Positions 12,224 to 40,568 of a stretch of 40,568 bases of DNA are shown piece after piece. The position numbers and the translations under genes were made by a program. The stretch is from Octopus bimaculoides (lineage: Eukaryota), in assembly GCF_001194135.2 (NCBI RefSeq), contig NC_069003.1:7166979-7207546 (forward strand). The letters are read 5' to 3'. The notes under the pieces are model-generated. The model saw nothing but the letters and a program-made list of their open reading frames with translations, was not told where the DNA came from and made no database searches. Position 1 is the first letter of the stretch. Each line of letters begins with the position of its first letter.

Positions 12224-12254
<31 letters not shown>

Positions 12255-12257
12255 AAT

Positions 12258-14644: not shown

Positions 14645-14970
14645 ATTTGGTACAAGACCAACAATGTCCCCCTCCCCTCTCAAAGGATGTTTGTCTTGCA
14701 AGTTACTTGGTGACCATGTGAAAAGCATCCAGTCCACACTGTAAAGTGGTTGGGTGTTTGGAAGGACATCCAACGGTGAAACCTGTCTGTGCTGGTGCCA
14801 TGTAAAAAGCACTCAATCCACTCTGTGGGATGGTTGGTGTCAGGAAGAGCACCCAGCCATAAAACCCATACCAAAACAGACAGTGAAATATGGTGCAGTC
14901 TTCTGCCTAGCCAGCTCCTGTCAAATCATGTAACCCATGCCAGCATGGAAAGCAGACATTAAATGATAAT
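14645..14970 (+). mobile_element. Family A SINE-like copy with internal duplication
   Basis: AAAAGCA..CA.TCCAC.CTG...GTGGTTGG.GT..GGAAG occurs twice; ends CCATGCCAGCATGGAAAGCAGACATTAAATGAT. Confidence 0.7.
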
Positions 14971-16846: not shown

Positions 16847-19800
16847 NNNNNNNNNNNNNNNNNNNNNNNNNNNNNNNNNNNNNNNNNNNNNNNNNNNNNN
16901 NNNNNNNNNNNNNNNNNNNNNNNNNNNNNNNNNNNNNNNNNNNNNNATGAACAAACGAACGAACGTATGTACATGCGAACGAACGTACACACAAACAAAC
17001 GAACTTACGTACAAAGGACCGAACGAACGAAATGAACAAACGAACGAAAGAACAAACGAACGTACGTACGAAGGACCTTTCGTACATACACACGAACGAA
17101 CGATCGAGCGAACGAACGATCGAGCGAACGAACGAAAGTACATACGTACGTACGCACGAACGAACGAATGTGCGAAAGAACGGACGAACGAACGTACGCA
17201 CGAACGAATGATCGAACGACGTAAGTAAGTACGAACGAACGTACCTTATTCCGTGCGTAAGAACGAACGAGCGTACGAACGACAGAACGAAAGTGCATAC
17301 GGACGTACAAACGAACGAACGAATGAACGTAAATGCGTACGTACAAACGAACGAACGAACGAACGTAATGTACGTACGCACGTACGAACGAAGGAACGTA
17401 CCTTACGTCTGTACGTACAAACGAACGAACGTCCGTATTACGAACGATCGAACCTGCGTACGTACGTGCAAACGAACGAACGGATGAACAAACGAACGAA
17501 TGAACGATCGAACTCAGATACGTACCTACGTACGTACGAACGAATTAACGAACGTAATTACACGAAGGAACGAACGAACGAAGGAAAGAACGAACGAGCG
17601 CACAAAAGAACGTACAAACGAAAAAAATTACGTACAAACGAACGAACGTAAGTACGTACGTTCGTTCATTCGTTCGTCCGTACATTCCTTCGTTCGTTTG
17701 TATGTACGTACGTTCGTTTGTTCCTTCNNNNNNNNNNNNNNNNNNNNNNNNNNNNNNNNNNNNNNNNNNNNNNNNNNNNNNNNNNNNNNNNNNNNNNNNN
17801 NNNNNNNNNNNNNNNNNNNNNNNNNNNNNNNNNNNNNNNNNNNNNNNNNNNNNNNNNNNNNNNNNNNNNNNNNNNNNNNNNNNNNNNNNNNNNNNNNNNN
17901 NNNNNNNNNNNNNNNNNNNNNNNNNNNNNNNNNNNNNNNNNNNNNNNNNNNNNNNNNNNNNNNNNNNNNNNNNNNNNNNNNNNNNNNNNNNNNNNNNNNN
18001 NNNNNNNNNNNNNNNNNNNNNNNNNNNNNNNNNNNNNNNNNNNNNNNNNNNNTCGATCGTTCATTCCTTCTTAAGTTCGTACTTACGTGCGTTCGTTCAT
18101 TTGTTCGTCCGTTCGTTTGCACGTACGTACGCAGGTTCGTTCGTTCTTTCGTTTGTTCGTTCGTACGGACGGACACAAGGTACGTTCCTTCTTTCGATTG
18201 TTAGTACGTACTTATGTAAGTACGTTCGGTCATTCGTTCGTTTGTACGTAAGCTTTTTTCGTTTGTACTTCTTTTGTGCGCTCGTTCGTTCGTACTTACG
18301 TTCATTAATTCGCTCGTACGTTACGTTCGTTCGTACGCACGTATCTGAGTTCGTTCGTTCGATCGTTCATTCCTTCTTAAGTTCGTACTTACGTGCGTTC
18401 GTTCATTTGTTCGTCCGTTCGTTTGCACGTACGTACGCAGGTTCGATCGTTCGTAATAAGGACGTACGTTCGTTCGTTCGTTTGTACGTACGGACATAAG
18501 GTACGTTCCTTCGTTCGTACGTCCGTTCTTCCGTTCGATCGTTTGTACGTACGTACGTACGTTCATTCGTTCGTTCGATCGATCGTACGTACGTACGTAC
18601 ATTCGTTCGTTTGTTTGTACGTACGGACGCACTTTCGTTCGTTCGTTCTTACAGACGGACATAAGTTACGTTCGTTCGTTCGTACTTACTTACGTAAATA
18701 CGTACGTACGTTCGGTCGTTTGATCATTCGTTCTTTCGTACATACGAACGAAAGAACGAACGAATGAACGAGTGCACAAAAGAACGAACGCACGAGCGTG
18801 CAATCGAACGAACGAACGTAAGTACGTACGAACGAACGAACAAACTAACGAATGAACGAACGAAAGTACGTAGGTACGTAAGTACGAACGAACGATCGAC
18901 CGAACGAACGAAAGTACATACGTACGTACGCACGAACGAACGTACGAAAGAACGAACGAATGAATGAACGAACGTACGAACGAATGATCGAACGTACGTA
19001 CGTAAGTACGAACGAAAGTACATACGTACGTACGCACAAACGAACGAAAGAAGGAATGAANNNNNNNNNNATTTACATAAGTAAGTACGAACGAACGAAA
19101 GTGCGTACGTACGTACAAACGAACGAATGAACGTACGTACAAACGAACGAACAATCGAACGAAAGAACGTACGTACGTGCGAACTAACGAACGAACATAC
19201 GTGCAAACGTACTTACGAACGATCGAATGAAGGAACGTACCTTATGTCCGTACGTACAAACGAACGAACGAACGTCCGTATTACGGACGATCGAACCTGC
19301 GTACGTACGTGCAAACGAACGAACGTATGTACGTACGTACGAACGGACGAACAAATAAACGAACGTACGTAAATACGAACGAATGAACGAACGAACTCAG
19401 ACACGCACCTACGTACGTGCGTTAGTTCGTTGGTTCGTATGTATCTTCGTTCGTTTGTACTTGCGCAATTACATACGTACGTAACAACGTACGTTCTTTC
19501 GTTCGTAGGTACGTACGAAAGGTCGTTCGTTCGAATGTTCCTACGTACTTCCGTTCGTTCGTTCGTACATACGTACGTACGTTCTTGTGTATGTACGAAA
19601 GATCGTTCGTTCGAATGTTCGTACGTACGTACATACGTACGTTTGCTTTATCTTTCGTTCGTTTGTACGTAAGTTTTTTTCGTTCGTACGTTGTTTTGTG
19701 CGCTCGTTCATTCGTTTGTACTTACGTTCGTTAATTCGTTAGTACGTTCTTACGTTCGTTCGATCGTTCATAAGTTCGTTCACACGTACGTACGCAGGTT

Positions 19801-22800
19801 CGATCGTTCGTAATACGGACGTATGTTCCTTCGTTCGTTTGTACGTATGGACATAAGGTACGTTCGTACGTACGTGCTTAGGTAAGTACGTACGTTCGTT
19901 CGTTCGTACGTACATTTGCACGTACGTTCGTTCGTTAGTTCGTACGTTTTTTCGTTCGATCGTGTGTACGTAGGTACGTATCTGAGTTCGTTCGTTNNNN
20001 NNNNNNCGTTAGTTCGTACGTTTTTTCGTTCGATCGTGTGTACGTAGGTACGTATCTGAGTTCGTTCGTTTGCACGTACGTACGCAGGTTCGATCATTCG
20101 TAATACGGACGTACGTTCGTACAAACGTACGTACGCACGAACGAACGAATGTGCGAAAGAATGGACGAACGAATGAATGAACGAACGTACGCACGAACGA
20201 ATGATCGAACGACGTAAGTACGAACGAACGTACCTTATTCCGTGCGTAAGAACGAACGAGCGTACGAACGACAGAACGAAAGTGCATACGTACGTACAAA
20301 CGAACGAACGAATGAATGAACGTAAATACGTACGTACAAACGATCGAACGGTAGAACGTACGTACGAACTAACGAACGTACGTGCAAACGTACGTACAAA
20401 CGAACGTACTTACATAAGTACGTACGAACGATCGAACGAAGGAACGTACCTTATGTCCGTACGCACAAACGAACGTACGTAAGTACGAACTTACGAACGA
20501 ACGAAAGATTGAACGAGTGTACAAAAGAACGAACGCACGAGCGTACAAACGAACGAACAACGTAAGTACGTACGTACGCACGAATGAACGAATGATTGAA
20601 TGAATGTACGTACGTAAGAACAAAACAAAGAACGAACGAAACGAAGGACGAACGATGGAACGAACGTACGTATGTACGTAGACACGAAATATCGAACGAA
20701 ATAACGAACGATCGAACGAACCAGCGAAACGAACGTCCGTACGTACGTTCGTAAAAAAGAACGAACGTACGTACGAACAAACGAACGAACGTATGCACAT
20801 ACGAACGAACGTACGCACATACGAACGAACGTACGTACAAAGAAACGAACGAACTTACGTACGTAGGTACAAACGAGCGAACGAACGAAAGAAAAAGCAA
20901 ACGAACGTGCGTATGTACGTACGTACGAACGAAAGAACGTACACATGTACGAACGAACGAACGTACGTAAGTATGTACGTTTGAACGAACGAACTAAAGA
21001 ACGAACGAACGAAAGAACGAACGTACGTAGGAACATTCGAACGGACTAACGAAAGAACGTACGTAGTTACGTACGTAAGTACAAACGAACGAAGATACGT
21101 ACGTTCGAATGAACGAAAGAACGGACATACGAACGAACGAACGTAGGTACGAACGATCGAACGAAGGAACGTACCTTATGTCCGTCCGTACAAACAAACG
21201 AACGTAAGAGCGAACAAACGAACGAACGAAATTACGTATATACGAACGATCGAATCTGCATACGTACGTACAAACGAACGAAGGAATGTACGAACGAACG
21301 GATGAACGAACGTTCGTTCGATCGTTCGTACGTACTTAAGTTCATTCGTTCGTTCGTTTGTACGTAAGTTTATTTCGTTCGTAGGTTCTTTTGTGCGCTC
21401 GTTCGTTCTTTCCTTCGTTCGTTAATTCGTTCGTTCGTAAGTTTGTACTTACATACGTTCGTTCTTTTGTTCGTCCGTTCGTTCGTTTGCACGAACCTAC
21501 TCAGGTTCGATCGTTCGTAATACGGACGTACGTTCGTTCGTTTGTACGTACGGACATAAGGTACTTCCTTGCTTCGATCGTTTGCACGTATGTTCGTTCG
21601 TTAGTTCGTACGTTCGTTCGTTTGTACGTACGTACGTTCATTCGATCGTTCGTACGTACATACGTACGCACTTTCGTTCGTTCGTACTTAGGTAAATACG
21701 TACGTACGTTCGGTCGTTCGATCATTCGTTCGATTGTACGTACGTGCGTACGTTCGTTCATTCATTCGTTCGTTCGTTCTTTCGTACATTCGTTCGTTCG
21801 TGTGTACGTACGTATGTACTTTCGTTCGTTCGCTCGATCGTTCGTTCGTACGAACGACGAAACGAACGGACGACCGAACGTAAGNNNNNNNNNNAAGAAC
21901 GTACGAAAGTACAAACGAAAGAAAGTTCGTAAGTAAGAACGATCGAACGAACGTACGTTCGGATGGACGAAAGAACGAACGAACGTACGTACATAAGTCC
22001 ATACGTACGAATGAAAGGATGAACAAACGAACGAACGTATGTACATGCGAACGAACGTACACACAAACGAACGACCTTTCGTACATACACACGAACGAAC
22101 GATCGAGCGAACGAACGAAAGTACATACGTACGCACAAACGAACGAATGTGCGAAAGAACGGACGAACGAATGAATGAACGAACGTACGCACGAACGAAT
22201 GATCGAACGAACGTACCTTATTCCGTGCGTAAGAACGAACGAGCGTATAAAGGACAGAACGAAAGTGCATACGTACGTACAAACGAACGAACAAGCGCAC
22301 AAAAGAACGTACAAACGAACGAACGTATGTACGTACGAACGAACGTACGTACGTTCGTCCGTACATTCCTTCGTTCATTTGTATGTACGTACGTTCGTTT
22401 GTTCCTTCGTTTCGTTCGTTCGTTTTTACGTATGTACGTTCATTCATTCGTTCATTCGTGAGTTCGTTCGATTATTCGTTCGTTCGTTTGTACGCTCGTT
22501 CATTCGTTCGTACATTCTTACGTTCGGTCGTCCGTTCGTTCGTACGTATCTGAGTTCGTTCGCTCGATCGTTCATAAGTTCGTACATACGTACGTTCGTT
22601 CATTCATTCGTCCGTTCGTACGTACATTCGTTCGTTTGTACGTACGTACGCAGGTTCGTTCATTCGTACGTACGGACACAAGGTACGTTCCTTCTTTCGA
22701 TTGTTAGTACGTACTTATGTACGCTCGTTCGTTCGTTCGTACTTACGTTCATTAATTCGCTCGTACGTTACGTTCGTTCGTACGTTCGTTCGCACGCACA

Positions 22801-25800
22801 TATCTGAGTTCGTTCGTTCGATCGTTCATTCCTTCGTAAGTTCGTACTTACGTGCGTTCGTTCATTTGTTCGCCCGTTCGTTTGCACGTACGTACGCAGG
22901 TTCGATCGTTCGTAATTAGGACGTACGTTCGTTTGTACGTACGGACATAAGGTACGTTCCTTCGTTCGTACGTCCGTTCTTCCGTTCGATCGTTTGTACG
23001 TACGTACATTCGATCGATCGTAGTACATTCGTTCGTTTGTTTGTACGTACGTACGCACTTTCGTTCGTTCGTTCTTACACACGGACATAAGTTACGTTCG
23101 TTCGTTCGTACTTACTTACGTAAATACGTCCGTACGTTCGGTCGTTCGATCATTCGTTCGTTCGTACGTACGTTCGTTCTTTCGTACATACGAACGAAAG
23201 AACGAACGAATGAACGAGTGCACAAAAGAACGAACGCACGAGCGTGCAATCGAACGAACGAACGAACGTAAGTACGTACGAACGAACAAACGTACGTAGG
23301 TACGTAAGTACGAACGAACGATCGAGCGAATGAACGAAAGTACATACGTACGTACGCACGAACGAACGTACGAAAGAACGAACGAATGAATGAACGAACG
23401 TACGCACGTACGAACGAACGAATGATCGAACGTACGTAAATAAGTACGAACGAAAGTACATATGTACGTACGCACGAACGAACGAAAGAAGAAATGAATG
23501 AACGGACGTACGCACGTACGAACGAACTAATGATCGAACGACCAAACGTAGTACGCATTTACATAAGTACGAACGAACGAAAGTGCTACGTACGTACAAA
23601 CAAACGAACGAATGTACGTACATACGTAGTTCGAACGAAAGAATGAACGTACGTACAAACGAACGAACAATCGAACGAAAGAACGTACGTACGTGCGAAC
23701 TAACGAACGAACATACGTGCAAACGTACTTACGAACGATCGAATGAAGGAACGTACCTTATGTCCGTACGTACAAACGAACGAACGAACGTCCGTATTAC
23801 GGACGATCGAACCTGCGTACGTACGTTCGTTCCATCGATCGTACGTGCGTACATTCGTTCGTTCTTTTGTACGTACTTACGCACTTTCTTTCGGTCGTTC
23901 GTTCGTTCTTACGCCCGGACATAAGGTACGTTCGTTCGTACTTACTTACGTAAATACGTACGTACGTTCGATCATTCGTACGTACATGCGTACGTACGTT
24001 CATTCATTCTTTCGTACATTCGTACATACGAACGAACGAATGAACGAGTGCACAAAAGAACGAACGCACGAGCGTACAAACGAACGAACGAACTAAANNN
24101 NNNNNNNNNNNNNNNNNNNNNNNNNNNNNNNNNNNNNNNNNNNNNNNNNNNNNNNNNNNNNNNNNNNNNNNNNNNNNNNNNNNNNNNNNNNNNNNNNNNN
24201 NNNNNNNNNNNNNNNNNNNNNNNNNNNNNNNNNNNNNNNNNNNNNNNNNNNNNNNNNNNNNNNNNNNNNNNNNNNNNNNNNNNNNNNNNNNNNNNNNNNN
24301 NNNNNNNNNNNNNNNNNNNNNNNNNNNNNNNNNNNNNNNNNNNNNNNNNNNNNCGAGTGCACAAAAGAACGAACGCACGAGCGTACAAACGAACGAACGA
24401 ACTAAAGAATTAACGTACGTACGAACGAAAGAACGTAGGTACGAACGAACGAACGAAAGAACGTACGTATGTAAGTACGAACGAAGGTACGTACGAAAGT
24501 ACATACGTACGTGCGTACGTACGCACGAACGAAAGAATGATCGAACGACCGAACGTACGTATTTACGTAAGAACGTATTAACGAACGTAAGTATGAAGGA
24601 ACGAACGAACGAGCGCACAAAAGAACGTACGAACGAAAAACTTACGTACAAACGAACGAACGAACGTACATACGTACGTTCGTTCATTCGTACATACGTA
24701 CGTACATTCCTTCGGTCGTTTGTACGAACGTACGCAGATTCGATCGTTCGTACATACGTAATTACGTTCGTTCGCCCTTTCGTTCGTACGTACGGACATA
24801 AGGTACGTTCCTTCGTTCGTTAGTTTGTACGTACGTATGTTCCTTCTTTCGTTCGTTCGATCGCTCGTTCGTTGGTTCGAACGTACGTAGGTACGTATCT
24901 TCGTTCGTTTGTACTTACGTACTTACATGCATACGCAACTACGTACGAAAGTACGTCCGTTCATTCGTTAGTCCGTCCTTTCGTTCGCTCGTTCGTTCAA
25001 ACGTACATACTTACGTACGTACGCACGTTAGCACTTCCGGTCGTTCGTTCGTACATACGTACGTTCTTTCGTTCGTTCGTTCCATCGTTCGTGTGTATGT
25101 ACGAAAGATCTTTCGTTCGAATGTTCGTACGTACGTACGTTCGTTTGCTTTTTCATTCGTTCGTTCGTTCATTTTGTTCGTTCGCTCGTTTGTACGTACG
25201 TAAGTTCGTTCGTTCGTTTTTATGTACGTTTGTTCGTACGTATGGACTTATGTACGAACGAACGAACGATCGAACGAACATACGTACGTACGTTCGTTCG
25301 TCCGTTCATACGTACGTACATTCCTTCGTTCGTTTGTACGTACGTACGCAGATTCGATCGTTCGTACATACGTAATTACGTTCGTTCGTTCGTTTGTACG
25401 TACGGACATAAGGCACGTTCGTTCGTTCTTTCGTTCGTTCGATCGCTCGGTCGTTGGTTCGAACGTACGTAGTTACGTATCTTCGTTCGTATGTACTTAC
25501 GTACTTACATACGTACGTTCTTTCGTTCGTTCGTACGTACGTAAGTACGCCCGTTCATTCGTTAGTACGTCCTTTCGTAGCTACGTACGAAAGATCGTTC
25601 GTTCGAATATTCCTACGTACGTTCGTCCTTTCGTTCGTTCGTTCTTTCGTTCTTACGCACGGACATAAGTTACCTTCGTTCTACTTACTTACGTAAATAC
25701 GTACGTACGTTCGGTCGTTCGATCATTCGTTCGTTCGTTCTTTCGTACATACGAACGAATGAATGAGTGCACAAAAGAACGAACGCACGAGCGTACAATC

Positions 25801-27061
25801 GAACGAACGAACGTCAGTACGTACGAACAAACTAACGAATGAACGTACGTACTAACGAACGAACGAGCAAAAGAACGTACGTAAGTACGAACGAACGATC
25901 GAGCGAACGAACGAAAGTACATACGTACGTACACACGAACGAACGAATGTACGAAAGAACGAACGAACGAATGAATGAACGAACGTACGTACAATCGAAC
26001 GTACCTTATGTCCGTGCGTAAGAACGAACGAACGAACGAAAGTGCGTACGTACGAACGATCGAATGAACGTACGTACGTACAAACGAACGAACATACGTG
26101 CAAACGATCGAACAAAGGAACGTACCTTATGTCCGTACGTACAAACGAACGAACAAACGAACGAAAGAGCGAACGAACGAACGTACGTCCGTATTACGAA
26201 CGATCGAACCTGGGCACGTACTTGCAAATGAACGAACGTACGTAAGTACGNNNNNNNNNNNNNNNNNNNNNNNNNNNNNNNNNNNNNNNNNNNNNNNNNN
26301 NNNNNNNNNNNNNNNNNNNNNNNNNNNNNNNNNNNNNNNNNNNNNNNNNNNNNNNNNAAGAACGAATTAACGAACGAACGAGCGAACGAGCGCACAAAAG
26401 AACGTACGAACGAAATAAACTTACGTACAAACGAACGAACGAATGAACGTAAGTACGTACGAACGATCGAACGAACGTACGTACGTACGTTCGTTCATCC
26501 GTTCGTTCGTACATTCCTTCGTTCGTTTGTACGTACGTATGCAGATTCGATCGTTCGTATATACGTAATTACGTTCGTTCGTTCGCTCTTACGTTCGTTT
26601 GTTTGTACGTACGGACATAAGGTACGTTCCTTCGTTCGATCGTTCGTTCGTACCTACGTTCGTTCGTTCGTACGTACGTTCTTTCGTTCATTCGGTCGCT
26701 CGCTCGAACGTACGTATCTTCGTTCGTTTGTACTTACGTACGTAACTACGTACGTTCTTTCGTTAGTCCGTTCGAATGTTCCTACGTACGTTCGTCCTTT
26801 CATTCGTTCGAACGTACATACTTACGTACGTTCGTACATATGTACGTTCTTTCGTTCGTACGTACGTACATACGCACGTTCGTTTGCTTTTTCTTTCGTT
26901 CGTTCGCTCGTTTGTACCTACGTACGTAAGTTCGTTCGTTCGTTTGTATGTACGTACGTTCGTTCGTATGTGCATACGTTCGTTCGTTTGTTCGTACGTA
27001 CGTTCGTTCGTTCTTTTTTACGAACGTACGTACGGACGTTCGTTTCGTTGGNNNNNNNNNN

Positions 27062-28476: not shown

Positions 28477-31400
28477 ATACGTACGTTCGTTCCATCATTC
28501 GTCTTTCGTTTCGTTCGTTCTTTCTTTCGTTCTTACGTACGTACATTCATTCAATCATTCGTTCATTCGTGCGTACGTACGTACTTACGTTTGTTCGTTC
28601 GTTTGTACGCTCGTTCTTTTGTACACTCGTTCAATCTTTCGTTCGTTCGTAAGTTCGTACTTACGCACGTTCGTTTGTACGTACGTTCCTTCGTTCGATC
28701 GTTCGTTAGTTCGTTAGTTCGTACGTACGTTCTTCCGTTCGATCGTTTGTACGTACGTACGTTCATTCGTTCGTTCGATCGATCGTACGTACATTCGTTC
28801 GTTCGTTTGTACGTACGTACGCACTTTCTTTCGGTCGTTCGTACGCACTTTCGTTCGTTCGTTCTTACGCACGGACATATGGTACGTTCGTTCGTACGTT
28901 CTTACGCACGGATATAAGGTACGTTCGTTCTACTTACTTACGTAAATACGTACGTTCGGTCGTTTGATCATTCGTTCGTTCGTACGTACGAGCGTGCGTT
29001 CGTTCATTCTTTCGTACATACGAACGAAAGAACGAGTGCACAAAAGAACGAACGCACGAGCGTACAAACGAACGAACGTAAGTACATACGAACGAAGGTA
29101 CGTACGTACGTGCGAACGGACGAAAGTACATACGTACGTACGTACGTACGCACGAACTAACGAACGAATGTACGAAAGAACGAACGAACGAATGAATGAA
29201 CGAACGAACGCACGTACGAACGACCGAACGTATTTACGTAAGTTCGAACGAACGAACGTACATTATGTCCGTGCGTAAGAACGAACGAAAGTGCGTACTT
29301 ACGTACAAACGAACGAACGAATGTTCGAACGAAGGAACGTACCTTATGTCCGTACGTACAAACGAACGAACGAACGAACGTACGTCCGTATTACGAACGA
29401 TCGAACCTGCGTACGTACGTGCAAACGAACGAATGGACGAACAAATGAACGATCGAACTCAGATACGTACCTACGTACACACGATCGAACGAAAAAACGT
29501 ACGAACTAACGAACGAACGTACGTGCAAATGTACGTACGAACGAACGAACGTACGTACTTACGCAAGCACGTACGTACGAACGTACCTTATGTCCATACG
29601 TACAAACGAACGAAGGAACATACGTCCGTATTACGAACGATCGAACCTGCGTACGTACGTGTGAACGAACGGACGAACGAACGTAAGTACGAACTTACGA
29701 ACGAATGAACGATCGAACGAACGTACTAACGAGCGTAAGTACAAACGAATGAACGAGCGCACAAAACAACGTACGAACGAAAAAAACTTACGTACAAACG
29801 AACGAACGAACGAACTTACGTACGTTCGTTCGTACACACGTACGTACATTCCTTTGTTCGTTCGTTCGCTCTTTCGTTCGTTTGTACTCACGGACATAAG
29901 GTACGTTCCTTCGTTCGATCGTTCGTACGTATGTACGTTCGTTGGTTCGTACGTACGTAGGTACATATAGTCGTTCGTTTGCACTTACGTACGTACGTAA
30001 CTATGTACCTACGTAACTATGTACGTTCTTTCGTTCGTACGCATGTAAGTACGTCTGTTCATTCGATAGTTCGTCCCTTCGTTCGTTCGTTCCATCGTTC
30101 GTACGTACGTACGAAAGATTGTTCGTTCGAATGTTCCTACGTACGTTCGTCCTTTCGTTCGTTCGAACGTACATACTTACGTACGTACACACGTTCGTAC
30201 TTTCGTTCGTACATACATACGTAAGAACGTACGTTCTTTCGTTCGTTCGTATGTATGTACGAAAGATCGTTCGTACGAATGTTCGTACGTACGTACATAC
30301 GCACGTTCGTTTGCATTTTTCTTGTTCGTTCGTTCGTCCTTCGTTTCGTTTCGTTCGTTCTTTCTTACGTTCTTACGTACATTCAGTCGTTCGTTCGTTC
30401 GTGCGTACGTACGTTCGTTCGTACATTCTTACGTTCGGTCGTCCGATCGTTCTCTCGTTAGTTCGTTCGTACGTACGTATCTGAGTTCGTTCGTTCGTAA
30501 GTTCGTACATACGTACGCTCGTTCGTTTGTACGTACGTACGCAGGTTCGTTCGTCATTTCGTTTGGTCGTTCGTTCGTTTGTACGTACGGACACAAGGTA
30601 CGTTCCTTCGTTCGATCGATCGTGTGTACGTAAGTTTTTTTCATTCGTACGTTCTTTTGTGCGCTCGTTCGTTCGTTCTTTCCTTTCTTCGTACTTACGT
30701 TCATTAATTCGTTCGTACGTATCTGAGTTCGTTCGTTCGATCGTAAGTTCGTTCATTTGTTCGTCCGTTTGTTCGTACGTATGTACCTACGTTCGTTCGT
30801 TTGCACGTACGTACGCAGGTTCGATCGTTCGTAATACGGACGTACGTTCGTTAGTTCGTACGTACGCTCTTCCGTTCGATCGTTTGTACGCACGTACGTA
30901 CGTTCATTCGTTCGTTCGTTCGATCGATCGTACGTACGTACATCCGTTCGTTCGTTTGTACGTTCGTACGCACTTTCGTTCGTTTGTTCTTACGCACGGA
31001 CATAAGTTACGTTCGTTCGTACTTACGTAAATACGTACGTACGTTCGATCAATTGTTCGTTCGTACGTGCGTACGTTCGTTCATTCGTACATACGAACGA
31101 ATGAACGAGTGCACAAAAGAACGAACGCACGAGCGTACAATCGAACGAACGTACGTACGAACGAACAAACTAAGGAATGAACGTACGTACGAACGAACGA
31201 ACGTAGGTACGTACGGACATAAGGTACGTTCCTTCGTTCGATCGTTCGTACTTCCGTAAGTACGTTCGATCGTTCGTACCTACGTACGTTCTTTCGTTCG
31301 TACGTAAGTACGTCCGTTCATTCGTTAGTCCGTCCTTTCGTTCGTTCGTTCGTACGTACGAAAGATCGTTCGTTCGAATGTTCCTACGTACGTTCGTCCT

Positions 31401-34400
31401 TTATTTCGTTCCAGCGTACATACTTACGTACGTACGCACGTTCGTACTTCCGTTCGTTTGTTCGTACATACGTACGTACGTTCTTTCGTTCCATCGCTTG
31501 TGTGTATGTACGAAAGATCGTTCATTCGAATGTTCGTACGTACGTTCGTTTGCTTTTTCTTTCGTTCGTTCGTTCATTCATTCGTTCATTTCGTTCGTTC
31601 GCTCGTTCGTTCGTATGTACATACGTTCGTTCCTTTGTTCGTACGTATGGACTTACGTACGTACGTTCGTTCTTTCTTACGAACGTACGTACGGACGTTC
31701 GTTCGATCGTTCTTACGTACGAACTTTCGTTATTTGGTTCATTCTTTCGATCGTTCGTTTGTTCGTTCGTTCGTTCGCACGTACGTACGCAGGTTCGTTC
31801 GTTCGTACATTCTTACATCCGTTCGTACGTACGTATCTGAGTTCGTTCATTCGTTCGTTCGTACGTACATTCGTTCGTTCGTTTGTACGTACGCAGGTTC
31901 GTTCGTTCGTTTGTACGTACGCAGGTTCGTTCGTTCGTTCGTCCGTCCGTACTTACGTACGTTCATTCGTTCGTTCGTTTGTACGTACGTTCGTTCGTTG
32001 GTACGTACTTATGTTCGTTCATTCGTTCGTTTGTACGTAAGTTTTTTTCGTTCTTACGTTCTTTCGTCCGTTCGTACGTATCTAAGTTCGTACTTACGTA
32101 GGTTCGTTCATTTGTTCGTCCGTTCGTTCGTACGTACGTACATTCGTTCGATCGTTTGCACGTGCGTACGCAGGTTCGATCGTTCGTAATACCGACGTAC
32201 GTTCGTTCGTTTGTACGTACGGACATAAGGTACGTTCCTTCGTTCGATCGTTCGTTCGTTTGTACGTACGCACGTACGTTCATTCGTTCGTCTGATCGTT
32301 CGTACGTACGTACGTACATTCGTTCGTTTGTACGTACGTACGTATGCACGGACATAAGGTACGTTCGTTCGTTCGATCGTTTGTACTTACTTACGTAAAT
32401 ACGTGGTTCGATCATTCGTTCGTTCGTACGTACGTGCGTACGTTCGTTCTTTCGTACATACGAACGAAAGAACGAACGAGTGAACGAACGAACGTAAGTA
32501 CGTACGAATGAACGTACGAACGAATGAACGTACGTACGTAAGAACGAACGACCGAACGAACAAAAGGAAGGACGAACGTACTACGTACGAACGATCGAAC
32601 GAACGTACGAAAGAATGAATGAACGAACGAACGAAAGAATGAACGAATAACGAACGAAAGTTCGTACGTAAGAACAATCAAACGAACGAGCGAAACGAAC
32701 GAACGAACAAAGGAACGAACGAACGAACGTGAATAAGTCCATACGTACGAGCAAATGAAGGAACAAACGAACGAACGTATGTACATACGAACGAACGAAG
32801 GAACAAACGAACGAACGAACATACGTACATACAAACGAACGGACGAACTTACGTACCTAAGTACAAACGAGCGAACGAACGAAATGAACGAACGAACGAA
32901 AGAAAAAGCAAACGAACGTACGTATGTATGTACGTAAGAACATTCGAACGAATGATCTTTCGTACATACACACGAACGATGGAACGAACGATCGAACGAA
33001 CGGACGGAAGTACGAACTTACGAACGAATGAACGATCGAACAAACGAACGAACGAACGCACGTAAGTACATACGAACGAAGGAACAAAAGAACGAACGAA
33101 CGAAAGAACAAGCGTACAAAACACACGAACGAAAGAAGGTACGTACATACGAACAAACGGAAGAACCAACTAACGAATGAACGGACGTACGTAAGAAAGA
33201 ACGAACGAAAGAACGTACGTACGTACGTACGAACGAACGTACGTATGTACGGACGTACGAATGAACGAACGAACGTACGTACGTCCGAAAAAACGAATGA
33301 TCGAACGAACAAACGAATGAACGTTTGTACGTACGTACGTCTGGACCCAGGAACAAACGTACGTACGTACGAACGATTGAACGAAGAAACGAACGTTCGT
33401 ACGTAAGAACAATCGAACGAACGAGCGAAATTTCCTACGTACGTACGAACGAGCGAAATTCCCTACGTACGTACGAACGAACGAACGTACGTACGTTCGT
33501 CCGTACGTACATGCGTGCGGGTGGATGAAAGAACGAACGAACGTACGTACGTACATGCGTACGGATGGATGAAAGAACGAACGAACGTACATAAGCCATT
33601 AAGTACGAACAAACGAACGTACGTACATACGAACGAACTTCCGTACGTACGAAGGAGCGAACGAACAAAATGACCGAACGAACGAACGTACGTACGAACA
33701 AACGAACGTACGTACGTACTTACGTACGTATGTACGAACAAACGGAAGAACGATCTTTCGTACGTACGTACGAACGATGGAACGAACGAAAGAACGAACT
33801 AACGAATGAACGGACGTACTTACGTACGTACGAACGAAGGAACAAACGAACGAAAATCGTACGTAGGTACGTAAGTTCAAACGAACGAACGAACGAACGA
33901 AAGTACATACGAACGTACGAACGAACGTAGGTACGAACGAACGAAAAAACGTACGTTCGTAAGAACGAACAACCGAACGTACGTTCGTACTTACGTAAGT
34001 ACGTACGGACTTATGTAAGTACGTACGTACGAACGATCGAACGAAGGAACGTACCGTATGTACGTACGTACAAACGAACGATCGAACGAACAAACGAACG
34101 AAAGAGCGAACAAACGAACGATCGAACCTTCGTACGTGCGTACAAATGAACGAACGAATGTACGTACGAACTAACGGACAAACAAATGAACGAACGTACG
34201 TAAGTACGAACTTACGAACGAACGAACGAATTAACGAACGTAAGTACGAAGGAAGGAACGAACGAACGAGCGCACAAAAGAACGTACGAACGAAAAAAAC
34301 ATACGTACAAACGAACGAACGATCTAACGAACGTACGTACGTACTTACGTACGTACGAACGATCGAATGAACAAACGTACCTTGTGTCCGTACGTACAAA

Positions 34401-37400
34401 CGAACGAACCTGCGTACGTACGTGCAAACGAACGAACGAATGTACGTACGGACGAACGAATGAACGAACGTACGTAAGTACGAACTTACGAACGAATAAA
34501 CGATCGAACTCAGATACGTACGTACGTACGAACGAAGAAAGGAACGGACGACCGAACGTAAGAACGTACGAACGAAATAACGAAAGTTCGTAAGTGAGAA
34601 CGATCGAACGAATAAACGAACGTACGTACGTTCGGACGGACGAAAGAACGAACGTACGTACATTAAGTCCATACGTACGAATGAACGGAGGAACAAACGA
34701 ACGAACGTATGTACATTCGAACGAACGAACGTATGTACATACAAACGAACTTACGTACGTATGTACAAAGGAGCGAACGAACGAAATGTACGAATGAATG
34801 AACGAACGAAAGAACAAACAAACGAACATTCGAACGAACGATCTTTCGTACATACACACGAACGATGGAACGAACGAACAATCTAACGAATGAACGTACG
34901 TACCAACGAACGAACGAAAGAACGTACGTACGTAAGTACGAACGAAGGTACGTACGTATGAACGAACGAACGAAAGTACATACGTACGTACGTACGCACG
35001 AACGAATGAATGAACGAATGACCAAACGTACGTACGTATTTACGTAAGTACGAACGAACGAACGTACTTTATGTCCGTGCGTAAGAACGAACGAACGACA
35101 GTGCGTACGTACGAACGATCGAACGAATGAACGTACGTACACACGATCGAACGAAAGAACGTACGAACTAACGAACGTACGTACTTACGTAAGCACGTAC
35201 GTACGAACGAAGGAACGTACCTTATGTCCATACGTACAAACGAACGAACGAAAAAAGGAACGAACGAAGGAACATACGTCCGTATTACGAACGATCGAAC
35301 TTGCGTACGTACGTGTGAACGAACGAACGTAAGTACGAACTTACGAACGAACGAATGAACGAGCGCACAAAACAACGTACGAACGAAAAAAACTTACGTA
35401 CAAACGAACGAACGAACGTAAGTACGAACGAACGAACGTACATTCCTTTGTTCGTTTGTACGTACGTACGCAGATTCGATCGTTCGTAATTACGTTCGTT
35501 CGTTCGTTTGTTCGCTCTTTCGTTCGCTTGTTCGTACGGACATAAGGTACGTTCCTTCGTTCGATCGTTCGTACGTACGTATGTTCTTTCGTTCGTTCGA
35601 TCGCTCGTTCGTTGGTTCGTACGTACGTATCTTCGTTCGTTTGCACTTACGTACGTACGTAACTATGTACGTTCTTTCGTTCGTACGTATGTAAGTACGT
35701 CTGTTCATTCGTTAGTTCGTCCTTTCGTTCGTTCGTTCCATCGTTCGTACGTACGTACAAAAGATCGTTCGTTCGAATATTCCTACGTACGTTCGTCCTT
35801 TCGTTCGTTTGTTCGTTCGAATGTTCGTACGTACGTTTGCTTTTTCTTTCGTTCGTTCGTTCGTTCATTCATTCGTTCGTTTGCACGTACGTACATAAGT
35901 TCGTTCGTTCGTTTGTATGTACGTACGTTCGTTCGTTCGTATGTACATACGTTCGTTCCTTTGTTCCTCCGTTTGTTCGTACGTATGGACTTATGCACGT
36001 ACGTTCCTTCGTTCTATCGTCCGTCCGAACGTACGTTCGTTCGTTCGTTCTTACGAACGTATGTACAGACGTTCGTTCGATCGTACTTACGTACGAACAC
36101 TCGTTCTTTCGTGTGTTATTTCGTTCATTGTTTCGTAGGTTCGTTCGTTCGGAGGTACGTACGTTCGATATTTCGTGTCTACGTACATACGTACGTACGT
36201 TCGTTCGTTCGTCCTTCGTTTCGTTCGTTCGTTCTTACGTACGTTCATTCATTCGTTCATTCGTTCGTACGTACTTACGTTCGTTTGTACGCTCGTGCGT
36301 TCGTTCTTTTGTGCACTCATTCATTCGGTCGTATGTACAAATTTCGGAAAGAACGAACGAACGAATGAATGAATGAACGAACTTACGCACGTACGTACGA
36401 ACGAACGAATGATCGAACGACCGAACGTACGTACGTATTTACGTAAGTATGAACGATCGAACGAACGAATGCACCTTATGTCCGTGCGTAAAAACGAACG
36501 AACGAACGACCGAATGAAAGTGCGTACGTACGTACAAACGAACGAACGAATGTACGTACGAACGATCGAACGAACGAATGAACGTACGTACGTGCAAACG
36601 AACAAGCGATCGATCGAAAGAACGTACGTACGAACTAACGAACGAACGTATGTGCAAACGTACGTACGAACGATCGAACGTACCTTATATCCGTACGTAC
36701 AAACGAACGAACGAAAAAGCGAACAAACGAACGTACGTCCGTATTACGAACGATCGAACCTGCGTACGTACGTGCAAACGAACGAACGAATGTACGTACG
36801 TACGTACGAACGGACGGACGAACAAATGAACGAACGTACCTAAGTAAGAACTTACGAACGAATGAACGATCGAACTCAGATACGTACGTACGAACGAACA
36901 AACGGAGGAACGAACGTAAGAACGTACGCACGAATTAAAGAACGTAAGTACGAAGGAACGAGCGAACGAACGAAGGAAAGAACAAACGAACGAACGAGCG
37001 CACAAAAGAACGTACGAACGAAAAAAACGTACTTACGAACGAACGAACGAAGGAACGTACCTTGTGTCCGTACGTACAAACGAACGAAAGAGCGAACAAA
37101 CGAACATACGTATGTACGAACGACCAAACGAACGAACGAACCTGCGTACGTACGTACAAACGAACGAACGAATGTACGTACGTACGAACGAACGCACGAA
37201 CGAATGAACGAACGAACAAACGAACGAAAGCACGAACAAAAGAACGTACGTACGTATGTACGAACGACCGAACGAACGAACCTGCGTAGGTACGTATAAA
37301 TGAACGAACGAATGTACGCACGTAAGTACGAACGAACTAACGAACGAGTGTACAAAAGAACGAACGCACGAGCATACAAACGAACGAACGAAAGTACGTA

Positions 37401-38133
37401 AGAACGAACGAACGAAAGTACGTAAGAACGAACGAACGTACCTTGTGTCCGTACGTACAAACGAACGAACGAACGAAAGAACGAACAAACGAACGTACGT
37501 ATGTACGAACGAACCTGCGTACGTACAAACGAACGAACGAACGTACGAACGAAAGCACGAACAAACGAACCTGCGTACGTACGTACAAATGAACGAACGA
37601 ATGTACGAACGAACTAACGAACGAATGAACGAGTGTACAAAAGAACGAACGCACGAGCGTACAAACGAACGAACGAATGAACATAAGTACGTACGAACGA
37701 ACGAACGTACATATGTACGTTGGTTCGTACATACGTACGTTCTTTCTTTCGTTCGTTCGCTCCTTCGTACGTAAGTTCGTTCGTATGTACGTACGTTCGT
37801 TTCTTCGTTCGTTCGCGCGTACTTAAGGACTTATGTACGTACGTTCGTTCGTACGTACGTATGTACGTTCTTTCGTACGGACTAACGTACGTCCATACGT
37901 ACGAACGAACGAACATACGTAGGAACGTACATACGTACGGATGGATGAAAGAACGAACGAAGTCCTTAAGTACGAGCAAACGAACGAACAAACGAACTTA
38001 CGTACGAAGGAGCGAACGAACGTACGTCCGTTCATTCGTTAGTTCGTTTGTACGTACCTTCTTTCGTTCGTTTGTTCTTTTGTACGCTCGTTCTTTCCTT
38101 TCTTCATTTGTGCGTACTCCGTTCGTTCACACG

Positions 38134-38186
38134 TAAATATAAATAAATATATATATATATATATTTAAATATATATATATATATAT
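38134..38186. repeat. (TA)n-rich run within or at the edge of the satellite
   Basis: Directly visible, followed by an N gap. Confidence 0.85.
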
Positions 38187-40568
38187 NNNNNNNNNNNNNN
38201 NNNNNNNNNNNNNNNNNNNNNNNNNNNNNNNNNNNNNNNNNNNNNNNNNNNNNNNNNNNNNNNNNNNNNNNNNNNNNNNNNNNNNNTCGTTCGTACCTAC
38301 GTTCGTTCGTACGTACGTACGTTCTTTCGTTCATTCAAACGTACGTATCTTCGTTCATTTGTACTTACGTACGTAACTACGTACGTTCTTTCGTTAGTCC
38401 GTTCGAATGTTCCTACGTACGTTCGTCCTTTCGTTCGTTCATTCTTTTTTACGGACGTTCGTTTCGCTGGTTCGTTCGATCGTTCGTTATTTCGTTCATT
38501 CTTTCGTTCGATATTTCGTGTCTACGTACATACGTACGTACGTTCGTTCCATCGTTCGTCCTTCGTTTCGTTCGTTCTTTCTTTCGTTCTTACGTACGNN
38601 NNNNNNNNNNNNNNNNNNNNNNNNNNNNNNNNNNNNNNNNNNNNNNNNNNNNNNNNNNNNNNNNNNNNNNNNNNNNNNNNNNNNNNNNNNNNNNNNNNNN
38701 NNNNNNNNNNNNNNNNNNNNNNNNNNNNNNNNNNNNNNNNNNNNNNNNNNNNNNNNNNNNNNNNNNNNNNNNNNNNNNNNNNNNNNNNNNNNNNNNNNNN
38801 NNNNNNNNNNNNNNNNNNNNNNNNNNNNNNNNNNNNNNNNNNNNNNNNNNNNNNNNNNNNNNNNNNNNNNNNNNNNNNNNNNNNNNNNNNNNNNNNNNNN
38901 NNNNNNNNNNNNNNNNNNNNNNNNNNNNNNNNNNNNNNNNNNNNNNNNNNNNNNNNNNNNNNNNNNNNNNNNNNNNNNNNNNNNNNNNNNNNNNNNNNNN
39001 NNNNNNNNNNNNNNNNNNNNNNNNNNNNNNNNNNNNNNNNNNNNNNNNNNNNNNNNNNNNNNNNNNNNNNNNNNNNNNNNNNNNNNNNNNNNNNNNNNNN
39101 NNNNNNNNNNNNNNNNNNNNNNNNNNNNNNNNNNNNNNNNNNNNNNNNNNNNNNNNNNNNNNNNNNNNNNNNNNNNNNNNNNNNNNNNNNNNNNNNNNNN
39201 NNNNNNNNNNNNNNNNNNNNNNNNNNNNNNNNNNNNNNNNNNNNNNNNNNNNNNNNNNNNNNNNNNNNNNNNNNNNNNNNNNNNNNNNNNNNNNNNNNNN
39301 NNNNNNNNNNNNNNNNNNNNNNNNNNNNNNNNNNNNNGTACGTACGTACGAACGAAGGAACGTACCTTATGTCCGTACGTACAAACGAACGAACGAACGT
39401 ACGTCCGTATTACGAATGATCGAACCTGCGTACGTACGTGCAAACGAACGAATGGACGAACAAATGAACGATCGAACTCAGATACGTACCTACGTACACA
39501 CGATCGAACGAAAAAACGTACGAACTAACGAACGAACGAACGTACGTGCAAATGTACGTACTTACGTAAGCACGTACGTACGAACGTACCTTATGTCCAT
39601 ACGTACGAACGAAGGAACATACGTCCGTATTACGAACGATCGAACCTGCGTACGTACGTGTGAACGAACGGACGAACGAACTTTTGAACGATCGAACGAA
39701 CGTAAGAACGTACTAACGAATTAACGAACGTAAGTACAAACGAATGAACGAGCGCACAAAACAACGTACGAACGAAAAAGACTTACGTACAAACCAACGA
39801 ACGAACGAAAGTAAAAGAAAACGAACGTACGTATGTACGTACGTACGAACATTCGAACGAACGATCTTTCGTACATACACAAGAACGTACGTACGTATGT
39901 ACGAACGAAGGAACGGAAGTACGTAGGAACATTCGAACGAACGACCTTTCGTACGTACCTACGAACGAATGAACGGACGTACGAACGACCGAACGAAAGA
40001 ACGTACGTATGTAAGTGCGTAAGTACAAACGAACGAAGATACGTACGAACCAACGAACGTACTTACGAACTAACGCACGTACGTAGGTGCGTGTCTGAGT
40101 TCGTTCGTTCATTCGTTCATATTTACGTACGTTCGTTTATTTGTTCGTCCGTTCGTACGTACATACGTTCGTTCGTTTGCACGTACGTACGCAGGTTCGA
40201 TCGTCCGTAATACGGACGTTCGTTTGTACGTACGGACATAATGTACGTTCCTTCATTCGATCGTTCGTAAGTACGTTTGCACGTATGTTCGTTCGTTAGT
40301 TCGCACGTACGTACGTTCTTTCGTTCGAACGTACGTATGTACGTACATTCGTTCGTTTGTTTGTACGTACGTACGCACTTTCGTTCGTTCGTACTTACTT
40401 ATGTAAATGCGTACGTACGTTTGGTCGTTCGTTCGTACGTGCGTACGTTCGTTCATTCATTCCTTCTTTCGTTCGTTCGTGCGTACGTACGTATGTACTT
40501 TCGTTCGTACTTACGTACGTACGTTCGATCATTCGTTCGTTCGTTCGTTCGTTCGTGCGTACGTACGT

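What the first reader, a model, noticed from the sequence alone, without database searches (positions are those of the whole stretch)
16947..40568. ~24 kb satellite with a CpG about every 4 nt, written as a CG-NN code with conserved landmark modules
Seen: most of the array keeps CG in a 4-nt register while the intervening dinucleotide varies (AA, TA, TT, AT, CA, GA). It is not a pure microsatellite. Specific 30-50 bp modules recur in an ordered way: GAAGGAACGTACCTTATGTCCG, GTCCGTATTACGAACGATCGAACCTGCG, GATCGAACTCAGATACG, GAGCGCACAAAAGAACG...GAAAAAAACTTACG and GAGTGCACAAAAGAACGAACGCACGAGCG. CpG density is extreme relative to the CpG-poor first 16 kb. Inference: a complex satellite family grown from CG tetramers, a candidate for specialised chromatin (methylation sink, centromeric or heterochromatic block). 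I do not recognise it as a described family.
Basis: partly seen in the sequence, partly recalled or inferred. Interest (0 to 1): 0.8.

Follow-up and report, generated by a model that had tools for sequence, protein, structure and literature searches.

The report
CpG-dense tetramer-built satellite with strand flips
The right-hand 24 kb of this window is a real, non-coding repeat built from the 4-letter units GAAC, GTAC and GTTC, so it has a CpG about every 4 to 8 letters; it looks like an ordinary but unusually CpG-dense satellite, and nothing here shows that it has a function.

Summary
In 16947-40568, CpG density is 15.4 per 100 nt (observed/expected 3.1). The left 16 kb has 1.25 per 100 nt (0.36). 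95% of CpG-to-CpG distances are multiples of 4.

New points:
- About half the array is the reverse complement of the other half. There are about 28 GAAC-rich and GTTC-rich blocks of 0.1-3 kb. They switch mostly in register, through the self-complementary unit GTAC.
- Blocks of 0.2-1 kb, switch junctions included, recur at 80-91% identity on both strands. There is no fixed long period.
- 79% of indels between copies are multiples of 4 nt.
- The modules are mutated tetramer stretches, not foreign sequence.
- Three gaps are false: their flanks overlap perfectly by 64, 53 and 440 nt. A 774-nt non-satellite island interrupts the array. About 20.5 kb is unique satellite.
- CpG transitions between copies are only 2.7 times as frequent as other transitions. 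This argues against heavy germline methylation.

My reading: a tetranucleotide-derived complex satellite that grew by slippage plus direct and inverted segmental duplication. Centromere, heterochromatin and methylation roles could not be tested. No relative and no published description was found, but no eukaryotic genome or repeat library was available.

The parts
16947..27051 (.). Satellite, first part. It is made of seven contigs separated by gaps and alternates between GAAC-rich (+) and GTTC-rich (-) blocks.
   Evidence: CpG 15-16.5 per 100 nt in every 1-kb bin; TRF period 4 throughout; orientation blocks.
19997..20070 (.). False gap (10 N) followed by a 64-nt copy of 19933-19996: an unmerged contig overlap.
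   Evidence: Suffix-prefix identity 100% over 64 nt; TRF 'period 74' across the gap.
24098..24406 (.). False gap (256 N) followed by a 53-nt copy of 24045-24097.
   Evidence: Suffix-prefix identity 100% over 53 nt.
27062..27835 (.). Non-satellite island: a 71-nt tandem repeat x2.5 (27064-27239), an AT-rich body, then a CpG- and GC-rich right end that runs without a gap into the satellite.
   Evidence: Sequence; TRF; unique in the window apart from the assembly duplicate; no Pfam, Rfam or tRNA match.
27946..28592 (.). False gap (207 N) followed by an exact copy of 27506-27945 at 28153-28592.
   Evidence: 100% identity over 440 nt.
28593..38136 (.). Satellite, part of the longest gap-free contig (28153-38186). 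It holds at least 9 orientation switches inside contiguous sequence.
38287..40568 (.). Satellite, last part, with a 739-N gap at 38599-39337. It runs to the end of the window.
36672..36775 (+). Example of the conserved A+B block, about 105-125 nt. 18 B-containing copies lie on both strands. The 5-nt unit CCTTA in A and the 7-nt unit CGTATTA in B shift the register by +1 and +3.
   Evidence: Alignment A1. For 17 copies the mean pairwise identity is 85%; nearest neighbours reach 99% and are often on the opposite strand. The 13-nt (47 cases) and 7-nt (31 cases) CpG spacings are.
36996..37033 (+). Example of the D+E block (GAGCGCACAAAAGAACGTACGAACGAAAAAAACTTACG).
18700..18798 (+). Conserved minus-to-plus switch junction with module F: GTTC GTTC (T/A)TTC GTAC ATAC GAAC GAA(A/T) GAAC ... 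GAGTGCACAAAAGAACGAACGCACGAGCG. It recurs at 23171, 25732, 28997, 31074 and 32441.
   Evidence: Junction sequences; F positions.
22330..22360 (.). Example of an in-register plus-to-minus switch: GAAC GAAC GTAC GTAC GTTC.
   Evidence: The surrounding 301 nt fold as single-stranded DNA into a long hairpin, -74.1 kcal/mol, z -5.3.

Best explanation
This is a non-coding, simple-sequence-derived complex satellite of an animal genome, probably an octopod.

Base layer (shown). The units are 4 nt long, with CG fixed and the other two letters AA, TA or TT. GAAC and GTTC are reverse complements of each other. GTAC is its own reverse complement and lies one substitution from each.

Growth:
1. Units are gained and lost by slippage or misalignment. 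This is shown by the indel lengths.
2. Point mutations and a few non-4 indels turned some stretches into the landmark modules. This is shown: the modules parse as mutated tetramers.
3. Blocks of 0.2-1 kb were then duplicated repeatedly in direct and inverted orientation, carrying modules and switch junctions with them. This is shown.
4. The inverted copies most likely arose by fold-back or template switching at the self-complementary GTAC tracts, which lets the new strand re-anneal in register on the other strand. This step is inferred.

The CpGs survive because the array is little methylated in the germline, because it turns over quickly, or both. This is inferred from a weak CpG-decay signal.

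I see no sequence-encoded product. The long ORFs exist only because the tetramer grammar contains no stop codons.
For: - 4-nt register and three dominant units.
- 151 of 192 indels between paralogous copies are multiples of 4 nt.
- Modules parse as tetramers. The +1 shift in A and the +3 shift in B restore the register, and they explain the 13-nt and 7-nt CpG spacings.
- Self-BLAST finds 281 repeat pairs of up to 978 nt at 80-91% identity on both strands, and several span switch junctions. Examples: 19071-19996 against 40408-39467, 18282-19060 against 22729-23498, and 20725-21419 against 27047-26369.
- The same minus-to-plus junction occurs 6 times.
- 21 of 23 switches keep the CG register and 22 of 23 contain GTAC.
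- A junction region folds at -74.1 kcal/mol, z -5.3. An in-block region folds at -47.4, z -4.2.
- No period above 4 stands out, and self-identity decays over about 400 nt.
- CpG transitions are 0.055 per site and non-CpG transitions 0.021 per site. The transition:transversion ratio at CpG is 1.4. 67% of CG slots are kept.
- No Rfam or tRNA match. Stop trinucleotides number 38 per kb, against 115 per kb in the flank.
Against: - The window is a gapped scaffold, apparently assembled from short reads, and three of its gaps are false. Long-range order, block orientation across gaps and total length may be wrong.
- The array is joined to the unique left flank only through N runs.
- Copies are counted as cells, not independent events, so the substitution spectrum is only rough. 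A 2.7-fold CpG excess does not exclude moderate methylation.
- Template switching is inferred from the form of the junctions only. Orientation of the bare tetramers could also change by point mutation (GAAC to GTAC to GTTC), though that cannot invert the 22-28-nt modules.
- Genomic copy number is unknown, so calling it a 'satellite' rests on this one locus.
Confidence: 0.65

Rival explanations
1. Assembly product. The repeat family is real, but this 24-kb arrangement (order, orientation, length, link to the flanking gene) was built by a short-read assembler and scaffolder from a collapsed or dispersed repeat.
For: - 14 gaps in the window, 10 of them in or beside the array.
- Three gaps have perfectly overlapping flanks.
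- The array touches the left flank only through N runs, and the RT fragment 16451-16846 is an orphan contig between two gaps.
Against: - The 10-kb gap-free contig 28153-38186 shows the same features, including at least 9 switches.
- Switch junctions are under 60 nt and GTAC runs are at most 16 nt, so single reads would span them.
- The same junction recurs 6 times with diverged flanks.
- Copies differ by 9-20%, too much for alleles or duplicated reads.
Confidence: 0.3
2. Specialised chromatin element: a centromeric or heterochromatic satellite, or a platform that recruits CpG-reading proteins (DNMT/MBD if methylated, CXXC if not).
For: - The CpG density is, from general knowledge, above that of vertebrate CpG islands.
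- Strong hairpin and cruciform potential.
- If the genome is Octopus bimaculoides, the 'satellite' repeat class was reported as relatively more methylated than transposons (PMC9476566).
Against: - There are no data on position, abundance or chromatin.
- There is no regular nucleosome-sized monomer.
- Copies are diverged at 80-91% identity rather than homogenised.
- CpG decay is weak.
- The array is scaffolded next to a gene exon and transposons, not within a repeat desert.
Confidence: 0.15
3. Array carried by or derived from a transposon: an expanded 3' tail of the neighbouring non-LTR element, or the internal tandem array of a Helitron/Helentron-like or other non-autonomous element whose backbone is the 27062-27835 island.
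For: - An RT C-terminal fragment on the + strand lies just left of the array.
- The island abuts the array without a gap and has a GC-rich hairpin near that junction.
- In oysters, satellite-like arrays are carried by Helentrons (PMC7492417, listed).
Against: - The RT-to-array junction is an N run.
- The island occurs once in the window.
- No transposase, Rep or helicase and no element termini were found.
- From general knowledge, 20 kb is far longer than the arrays usually carried inside transposons.
Confidence: 0.1
4. Contaminant, or non-nuclear DNA.
For: None, beyond the lack of a sequenced junction with the left flank.
Against: - The module 24-mers are absent from 32 million bacterial and archaeal contigs, from IMG/VR and from JGI metagenomes.
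- The island, which is contiguous with the array, has the same AT-rich, CpG-poor composition as the flank.
Confidence: 0.02

Closest known systems
Human satellites 2 and 3, (GGAAT)n-derived (from general knowledge; PMC4022460 appears in the list)
   Same: A short simple unit that has degenerated into a complex family. Arrays contain diverged sub-blocks and strand inversions. They carry CpGs.
   Different: The unit is 5 nt, not 4, and CpG density is far lower. The arrays are megabase-sized and pericentromeric with defined subfamilies. Abundance and position are unknown here.
Bkm (banded krait minor) satellite, mixed GATA/GACA tetramers (from general knowledge)
   Same: Long arrays that mix two or three tetramers differing by one base, without a fixed longer monomer.
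   Different: Bkm has no CpG, no self-complementary unit, no landmark modules and no regular strand switching. It is conserved across vertebrates and enriched on sex chromosomes.
Hermit-crab (Pagurus) tetramer satellites with complex 'punctuation' segments (from general knowledge)
   Same: Runs of a simple tetramer interrupted by conserved, more complex segments in a recurring order.
   Different: The unit is different (TAGG) and there is a regular repeat length. Neither the CpG register nor inverted blocks were described.
Hypomethylated CpG-retaining satellites of ape germlines (PMC13308097)
   Same: A repeat that keeps a high CpG content inside a CpG-depleted genome. The proposed reason is low germline methylation plus rapid turnover.
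   Different: That is a methylome observation in apes. No methylation data exist here and the sequences are unrelated.
(AACG)n and (ACGT)n microsatellites, the 'Simple_repeat' class of repeat annotation
   Same: The underlying units are the same. Short examples exist elsewhere: (GAAC)6 in L002/L003, and a 400-nt degenerate array in L001.
   Different: Here the pure runs are at most 5 units, the array is at least 20 kb, and there are conserved 55-125-nt blocks and duplications of 0.2-1 kb.

Membership tests
Microsatellite (simple tandem repeat of a 1-6-nt unit) | Uninterrupted or nearly uninterrupted head-to-tail copies of one unit | tested here: not met
   The longest pure run is 5 units. TRF period-4 rows show only 61-79% matches. 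Three units are mixed.
Microsatellite (simple tandem repeat of a 1-6-nt unit) | Length change in whole units | tested here: met
   79% of indels between copies are multiples of 4 nt.
Classical satellite DNA | A definable monomer repeated head to tail | tested here: not met
   No autocorrelation peak beyond multiples of 4, apart from a faint bump at 24-28. Module F spacing varies from 0.3 to 3.3 kb. Blocks lie on both strands.
Classical satellite DNA | A long array (tens of kb or more) | tested here: inconclusive
   About 20.5 kb of unique satellite sequence that runs off the window. However, the scaffold is gapped and three gaps are false.
Classical satellite DNA | High genomic copy number and a heterochromatic, centromeric or subtelomeric position | not testable with these tools
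   No reads, no chromosome-level assembly and no eukaryotic genome collection are available. There is no (TTAGGG)n in the window.
CpG island (Gardiner-Garden and Frommer criteria, from general knowledge) | Length over 200 nt and CpG o/e over 0.6 | tested here: met
   o/e 3.1-3.2 over 20 kb.
CpG island (Gardiner-Garden and Frommer criteria, from general knowledge) | G+C above 50% | tested here: not met
   G+C is 44.5%.
Transposon-borne tandem array (Helitron/Helentron, MITE or LINE tail) | The array is bounded by element termini or by a coding backbone that recurs with it | tested here: inconclusive
   The island 27062-27835 occurs once and has no protein-family match. The junction between the RT fragment and the array is an N run.
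Centromeric satellite | Occupied by the centromeric histone CENP-A | not testable with these tools
   This needs ChIP or CUT&Tag.

The most novel reading that the evidence does not exclude
The array is one locus of an abundant cephalopod satellite whose reverse-complement-symmetric CpG grammar (a CpG every 4 nt, identical on both strands) makes it a dedicated platform for CpG-reading chromatin proteins. It could, for example, mark the still undescribed centromeres or a germline-hypomethylated heterochromatin compartment. Its in-register strand switches would then reflect a fold-back amplification mechanism specific to self-complementary tetramers.
Probability: 0.1. Interest if true: 0.65.

Novelty: new member of a known kind. 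Interest (0 to 1): 0.3.

Why it matters
For annotation there are three practical warnings:
- The array yields spurious ORFs of up to 381 aa in all six frames.
- Three of its gaps are false and come with duplicated flanks.
- It has only 2 CCGG sites in 20.5 kb, so MspI-based reduced-representation bisulfite sequencing cannot see about 3,300 CpGs.

For biology, it is a clean example of how a tetranucleotide repeat whose units are mutual reverse complements can grow into a two-stranded, module-bearing array. It also keeps CpG at three times expectation inside a CpG-depleted genome. If it proves abundant, it would be an obvious candidate to test for the unknown centromeric or heterochromatic repeats of cephalopods, and for the idea that germline hypomethylation preserves CpG in repeats.

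Tried and rejected
Looking for relatives elsewhere:
- The 156-aa satellite ORF against 5.8 billion protein clusters gave one weak hit. That hit, P0121/L001, is an unrelated short degenerate array.
- The same ORF against 1.84 billion representatives gave 53 weak low-complexity hits, none carrying the modules.
- Exact module 24-mers gave 0 hits in JGI metagenomes, IMG/VR and GTDB genomes.
- The commonest generic 24-mer hit only a (GAAC)6 microsatellite in GC-rich metagenome contigs and gave 0 elsewhere.
- Exact look-up of the island ORF and of a satellite ORF found nothing on record.
- These negatives mean little, because no eukaryotic genome collection and no Repbase or Dfam was available.

Identifying the organism:
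- The RT fragment's best hit is 66% identical and unnamed; the only named hits among the 120 listed are crustacean hypothetical proteins plus one unnamed JGI 'hypothetical protein'.
- The 38-aa exon found no candidate.
- The only lead is a 24-mer that I recalled from an octopus SINE. It matches three flank sites with 1-3 mismatches, against 0 expected by chance. This rests on memory and is not proof.

Literature: nine searches found no description of a GAAC/GTAC satellite or of any cephalopod satellite family.

Ideas rejected:
- True palindromes at the switches. The arms are only 70-76% alike, which I judge to be no more than the general similarity of any two blocks; no control was run.
- A fixed higher-order repeat.
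- A second-order tetramer Markov null. It copies 12-mers and so reproduces the modules, which makes it uninformative.
- Telomeric, rRNA, tRNA or other known RNA content.
- A coding reading. The ORFs are a by-product of a grammar that has no stop codons.
Full report
**1. What is in the sequence**

CpG content. The span 16947-40568 has 3374 CpG in 21,848 read bases. That is 15.4 per 100 nt, observed/expected 3.14. The left part of the window, 1-16946, has 1.25 per 100 nt and o/e 0.36. GpC shows the opposite pattern: o/e 0.34 in the array and 1.04 in the flank.

Register. Of 3363 successive CpG distances, 61% are exactly 4 nt and 95% are multiples of 4. Self-identity is 0.68 at lag 4 and 0.12-0.21 at lags that are not multiples of 4. 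In the flank it averages 0.27.

Units. The two letters between CpGs are TA (31%), AA (29%) or TT (24%), so the units are GTAC, GAAC and GTTC. No pure run of one unit is longer than 5 copies.

**2. Gaps, tested first**

The window has 14 N runs. Ten of them lie in or next to the array, four more than the scan's program listed.

For three gaps, the end of the left contig is repeated exactly at the start of the right contig:
- 19997-20006: 64 nt
- 24098-24353: 53 nt
- 27946-28152: 440 nt, so that 27506-27945 equals 28153-28592

They are unmerged overlaps. No sequence is missing there, and the duplicated ends inflate the array by 557 nt.

For the other gaps I found no overlap. Because gap lengths are only estimates, neither continuity nor the 4-nt register can be followed across them.

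The array meets the unique left flank only through N runs. The 396-nt retrotransposon fragment at 16451-16846 is an orphan contig between two gaps. The array runs to the last base of the window. Both true boundaries are therefore unseen.

After removing N, duplicates and the island described below, 20,517 nt of satellite remain. They have 16.0 CpG per 100 nt, and 71% of all C are followed by G.

**3. The landmark modules are real and ordered**

With up to one mismatch per seven bases, and with duplicates removed, the six modules occur 42 (A), 18 (B), 14 (C), 34 (D), 11 (E) and 10 (F) times.

Two chance models were run:
- Shuffling the tetramers gives means of 0, 0, 0.01, 0.05, 1.6 and 0.
- A first-order chain of tetramers is still exceeded by A, B, D and F in all 100 simulations. 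The short modules C and E cannot be told apart from that stricter model.

A second-order chain reproduces the modules because it copies 12-mers, so it is not a useful control.

The order along the + strand is A-B-C-D-E. On the - strand it is E-D-C-B-A.

An alignment of 11 copies (A1) shows three things:
- A and B form one conserved block of about 105-125 nt.
- D and E form a block of about 55 nt.
- The stretch between them varies in length, with or without C, mostly in steps of 4 nt.

F is a variant of D that always lies just after one particular kind of strand switch.

The modules are not foreign sequence. They parse as mutated tetramers. A contains one 5-nt unit (CCTTA) and B one 7-nt unit (CGTATTA). 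Together these shift the register by 1 + 3 = 4 and so restore it. They account for the 47 CpG distances of 13 nt and the 31 of 7 nt.

**4.

GAAC and GTTC are reverse complements, and GTAC is its own reverse complement. The array alternates between GAAC-rich and GTTC-rich blocks, about 28 of them, each 0.1-3 kb long. The AT skew flips with the blocks while the GC skew stays near zero.

Because the 22-28-nt modules are inverted together with the blocks, these are true inversions and not just point mutations of the tetramers.

Of 23 switches, 21 keep the CG register and 22 contain at least one GTAC unit. The two exceptions run through modules B and A, which carry the known +3 and +1 shifts.

A typical plus-to-minus switch reads GAAC GAAC GTAC GTAC GTTC GTTC.

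One minus-to-plus junction, GTTC GTTC (T/A)TTC GTAC ATAC GAAC GAA(A/T) GAAC followed by module F, occurs six times. It was therefore copied as part of a larger block.

At least 9 switches lie inside the gap-free 10-kb contig 28153-38186. They are not merely contigs that a scaffolder flipped.

**5. How it grew**

Self-comparison gives 281 repeat pairs in the window, nearly all in the array. They reach 978 nt, have 80-91% identity and lie in both orientations. Several span a switch junction:
- 19071-19996 against 40408-39467, 88%
- 18282-19060 against 22729-23498, 86%
- 20725-21419 against 27047-26369, 87%

Seventeen copies of the A+B block average 85% identity. The nearest neighbour of a copy is often far away and on the other strand, for example 19274+ and 40190- at 99%.

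No long period exists. Self-identity at multiples of 4 falls smoothly to background within about 400-600 nt, with only a faint bump at 24-28 nt. Copies of F are 0.3-3.3 kb apart.

Between paralogous copies, 151 of 192 indels (79%) are multiples of 4 nt.

I read this history as follows:
- A tetranucleotide repeat changed length by whole units. This is shown.
- It degenerated and acquired landmark variants. This is shown.
- It was amplified by repeated direct and inverted segmental duplication. This is shown.

The mechanism of inversion is inferred. GTAC tracts are self-complementary, so a nascent strand can fold back or switch template and continue in register on the other strand. As single-stranded DNA, a 301-nt junction region folds into one long hairpin at -74.1 kcal/mol (z -5.3). 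A region inside a block folds at -47.4 kcal/mol (z -4.2).

The arms on either side of a switch are only 70-76% alike. I judge that to be no more than the general similarity of any two blocks, though I ran no control. On that reading the present switches are old joints and not fresh palindromes.

**6. CpG retention and methylation**

If every in-register slot once held CG, 67% still do. The lost slots are CA or TG in 48% of cases, AG or CT in 31%, and GG or CC in 12%.

In 75 alignments of paralogous copies (17.5 kb of aligned columns), transitions at CpG sites are 0.055 per site and transitions elsewhere are 0.021 per site, a 2.7-fold excess. The transition:transversion ratio at CpG is 1.4.

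Sequence that is methylated in the germline usually shows roughly a tenfold excess (general knowledge). Copies that differ by 10-20% would then have lost most of their CpGs. The sequence therefore argues against heavy germline methylation and against a 'methylation sink'. It fits a repeat that is weakly methylated, turns over quickly, or both.

The argument is rough. Cells are not independent events, and the non-CpG sites are mostly A or T.

A comparable idea, that germline-hypomethylated satellites act as CpG reservoirs in a CpG-depleted genome, has been put forward for apes (PMC13308097).

**7. No product**

There is no Rfam family and no tRNA. ORFs of up to 381 aa occur in all frames. However, GAAC, GTAC and GTTC in any combination cannot form TAA, TAG or TGA on either strand. 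Stop trinucleotides are three times rarer here than in the flank. The ORFs are mechanical.

**8. Interruptions**

The stretch 27062-27835 is not satellite. It has a 71-nt repeat x2.5, an AT-rich and CpG-poor body, and a CpG-rich right end with a short perfect hairpin. It runs without a gap into the satellite. Apart from the assembly duplicate it occurs once in the window, and it matches no protein or RNA family. It could be an inserted element or a remnant of the original locus.

An (AT)n tract ends a contig at 38137-38186.

**9. Surroundings and organism**

The left 16 kb contains:
- an exon-like segment with splice sites and a weak HAP1_N match, at 7129-7243
- several SINE-like copies with TA/CA tails
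- a non-LTR reverse-transcriptase fragment

The tools did not name the organism. The RT fragment's best hit is 66% identical and unnamed, and the exon found nothing.

A 24-mer that I recalled from an octopus SINE matches three flank sites with 1-3 mismatches, against 0 expected by chance.

If it is Octopus bimaculoides, published methylomes report the following (PMC9476566):
- under 10% of CpGs are methylated
- methylation is concentrated in gene bodies
- methylation is very low on transposons
- the 'satellite' annotation class is relatively higher

The RRBS part of that study used MspI. This array has only 2 CCGG sites in 20.5 kb, so only whole-genome data could cover it.

**10. Comparison with what is known**

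I found no relative in the protein collections, JGI metagenomes, IMG/VR or GTDB genomes. None of these holds animal genomes in a searchable form, and neither Repbase nor Dfam was available.

Short arrays of the same units exist elsewhere:
- (GAAC)6 in GC-rich metagenome contigs
- a 400-nt degenerate array in L001

Nine literature searches found no description of such a satellite or of any cephalopod satellite family. A recent detailed repeat annotation of O. vulgaris does not mention satellites at all.

In kind, this resembles other satellites derived from simple sequence: human HSat2/3, the Bkm GATA/GACA satellite, and the hermit-crab tetramer satellites with 'punctuation' segments (all from general knowledge). 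It differs from them in three ways:
- a CpG in every unit
- a unit set that is closed under reverse complement
- strand switches that stay in register

It fails the definition of a microsatellite, because its pure runs are too short. It fails the definition of a classical satellite, because it has no fixed monomer. It fails the G+C criterion of a CpG island, at 44.5%.

**11. Verdict**

The functional suggestions are untested, and the sequence leans against the methylation-sink version.

This is most likely a new member of a known kind: a simple-sequence-derived complex satellite. It is of moderate interest. Its practical value is for annotation, and it would be a candidate to check once long reads and methylomes are at hand.

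Noticed in passing
window 19997-20070, 24098-24406, 27946-28592: Three scaffold gaps are false. The contig ends on each side overlap at 100% identity (64, 53 and 440 nt), so each gap carries a duplicated flank.
   Followed up: yes
window 27062-27835: A non-satellite island inside the array. It has a 71-nt tandem repeat x2.5, an AT-rich body, and a CpG-rich right end with the hairpin TCGCGC-GT-GCGCGA that runs straight into the satellite. It matches no protein or RNA family and is unique in the window.
   Followed up: partly
window 16451-16846 (+): C-terminal fragment of a non-LTR retrotransposon reverse transcriptase with one in-frame stop. It lies on an orphan contig between two gaps, immediately left of the array. 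Its best database hit is 66% identical.
   Followed up: partly
window 7129-7243 (+): An exon-like segment with AG and GT splice sites that encodes DLQLAAEIGKALLENNKELESQ... It has a weak match to the HAP1 N-terminal family, so the array may lie in or beside a gene.
   Followed up: partly
window about 2248-2271, 6477-6500, 12883-12906: SINE-like copies with TA/CA microsatellite tails. A 24-mer recalled from an octopus SINE matches them with 1-3 mismatches, against 0 expected by chance. This is the only lead to the organism.
   Followed up: partly
window 3942-4102 and 11100-11260: A 161-nt dispersed repeat at 97% identity in the left flank.
   Followed up: no
window 16947-40568: There are only 2 CCGG sites in 20.5 kb of satellite, against 1019 ACGT, 1061 GTAC and 600 CGTACG. 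MspI-based bisulfite methods cannot see the array, whereas enzymes that cut at ACGT or CGTACG would cut it into very small pieces.
   Followed up: yes
window 33599-34744 (-) and many others: ORFs of up to 381 aa in all six frames, rich in NERT or FVRS-like motifs. The tetramer grammar cannot form stop codons, so gene finders may call false proteins here.
   Followed up: yes
window 38137-38186: An (AT)n tract ends a satellite contig just before a 100-N gap.
   Followed up: no
L001 290-690 (ENA ERZ27293633, 909-nt contig): An unrelated metagenome contig carries a 400-nt degenerate array of GAAC, AAAC and GTAA units between unique flanks. Short arrays with a similar grammar therefore exist in other organisms.
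   Followed up: partly
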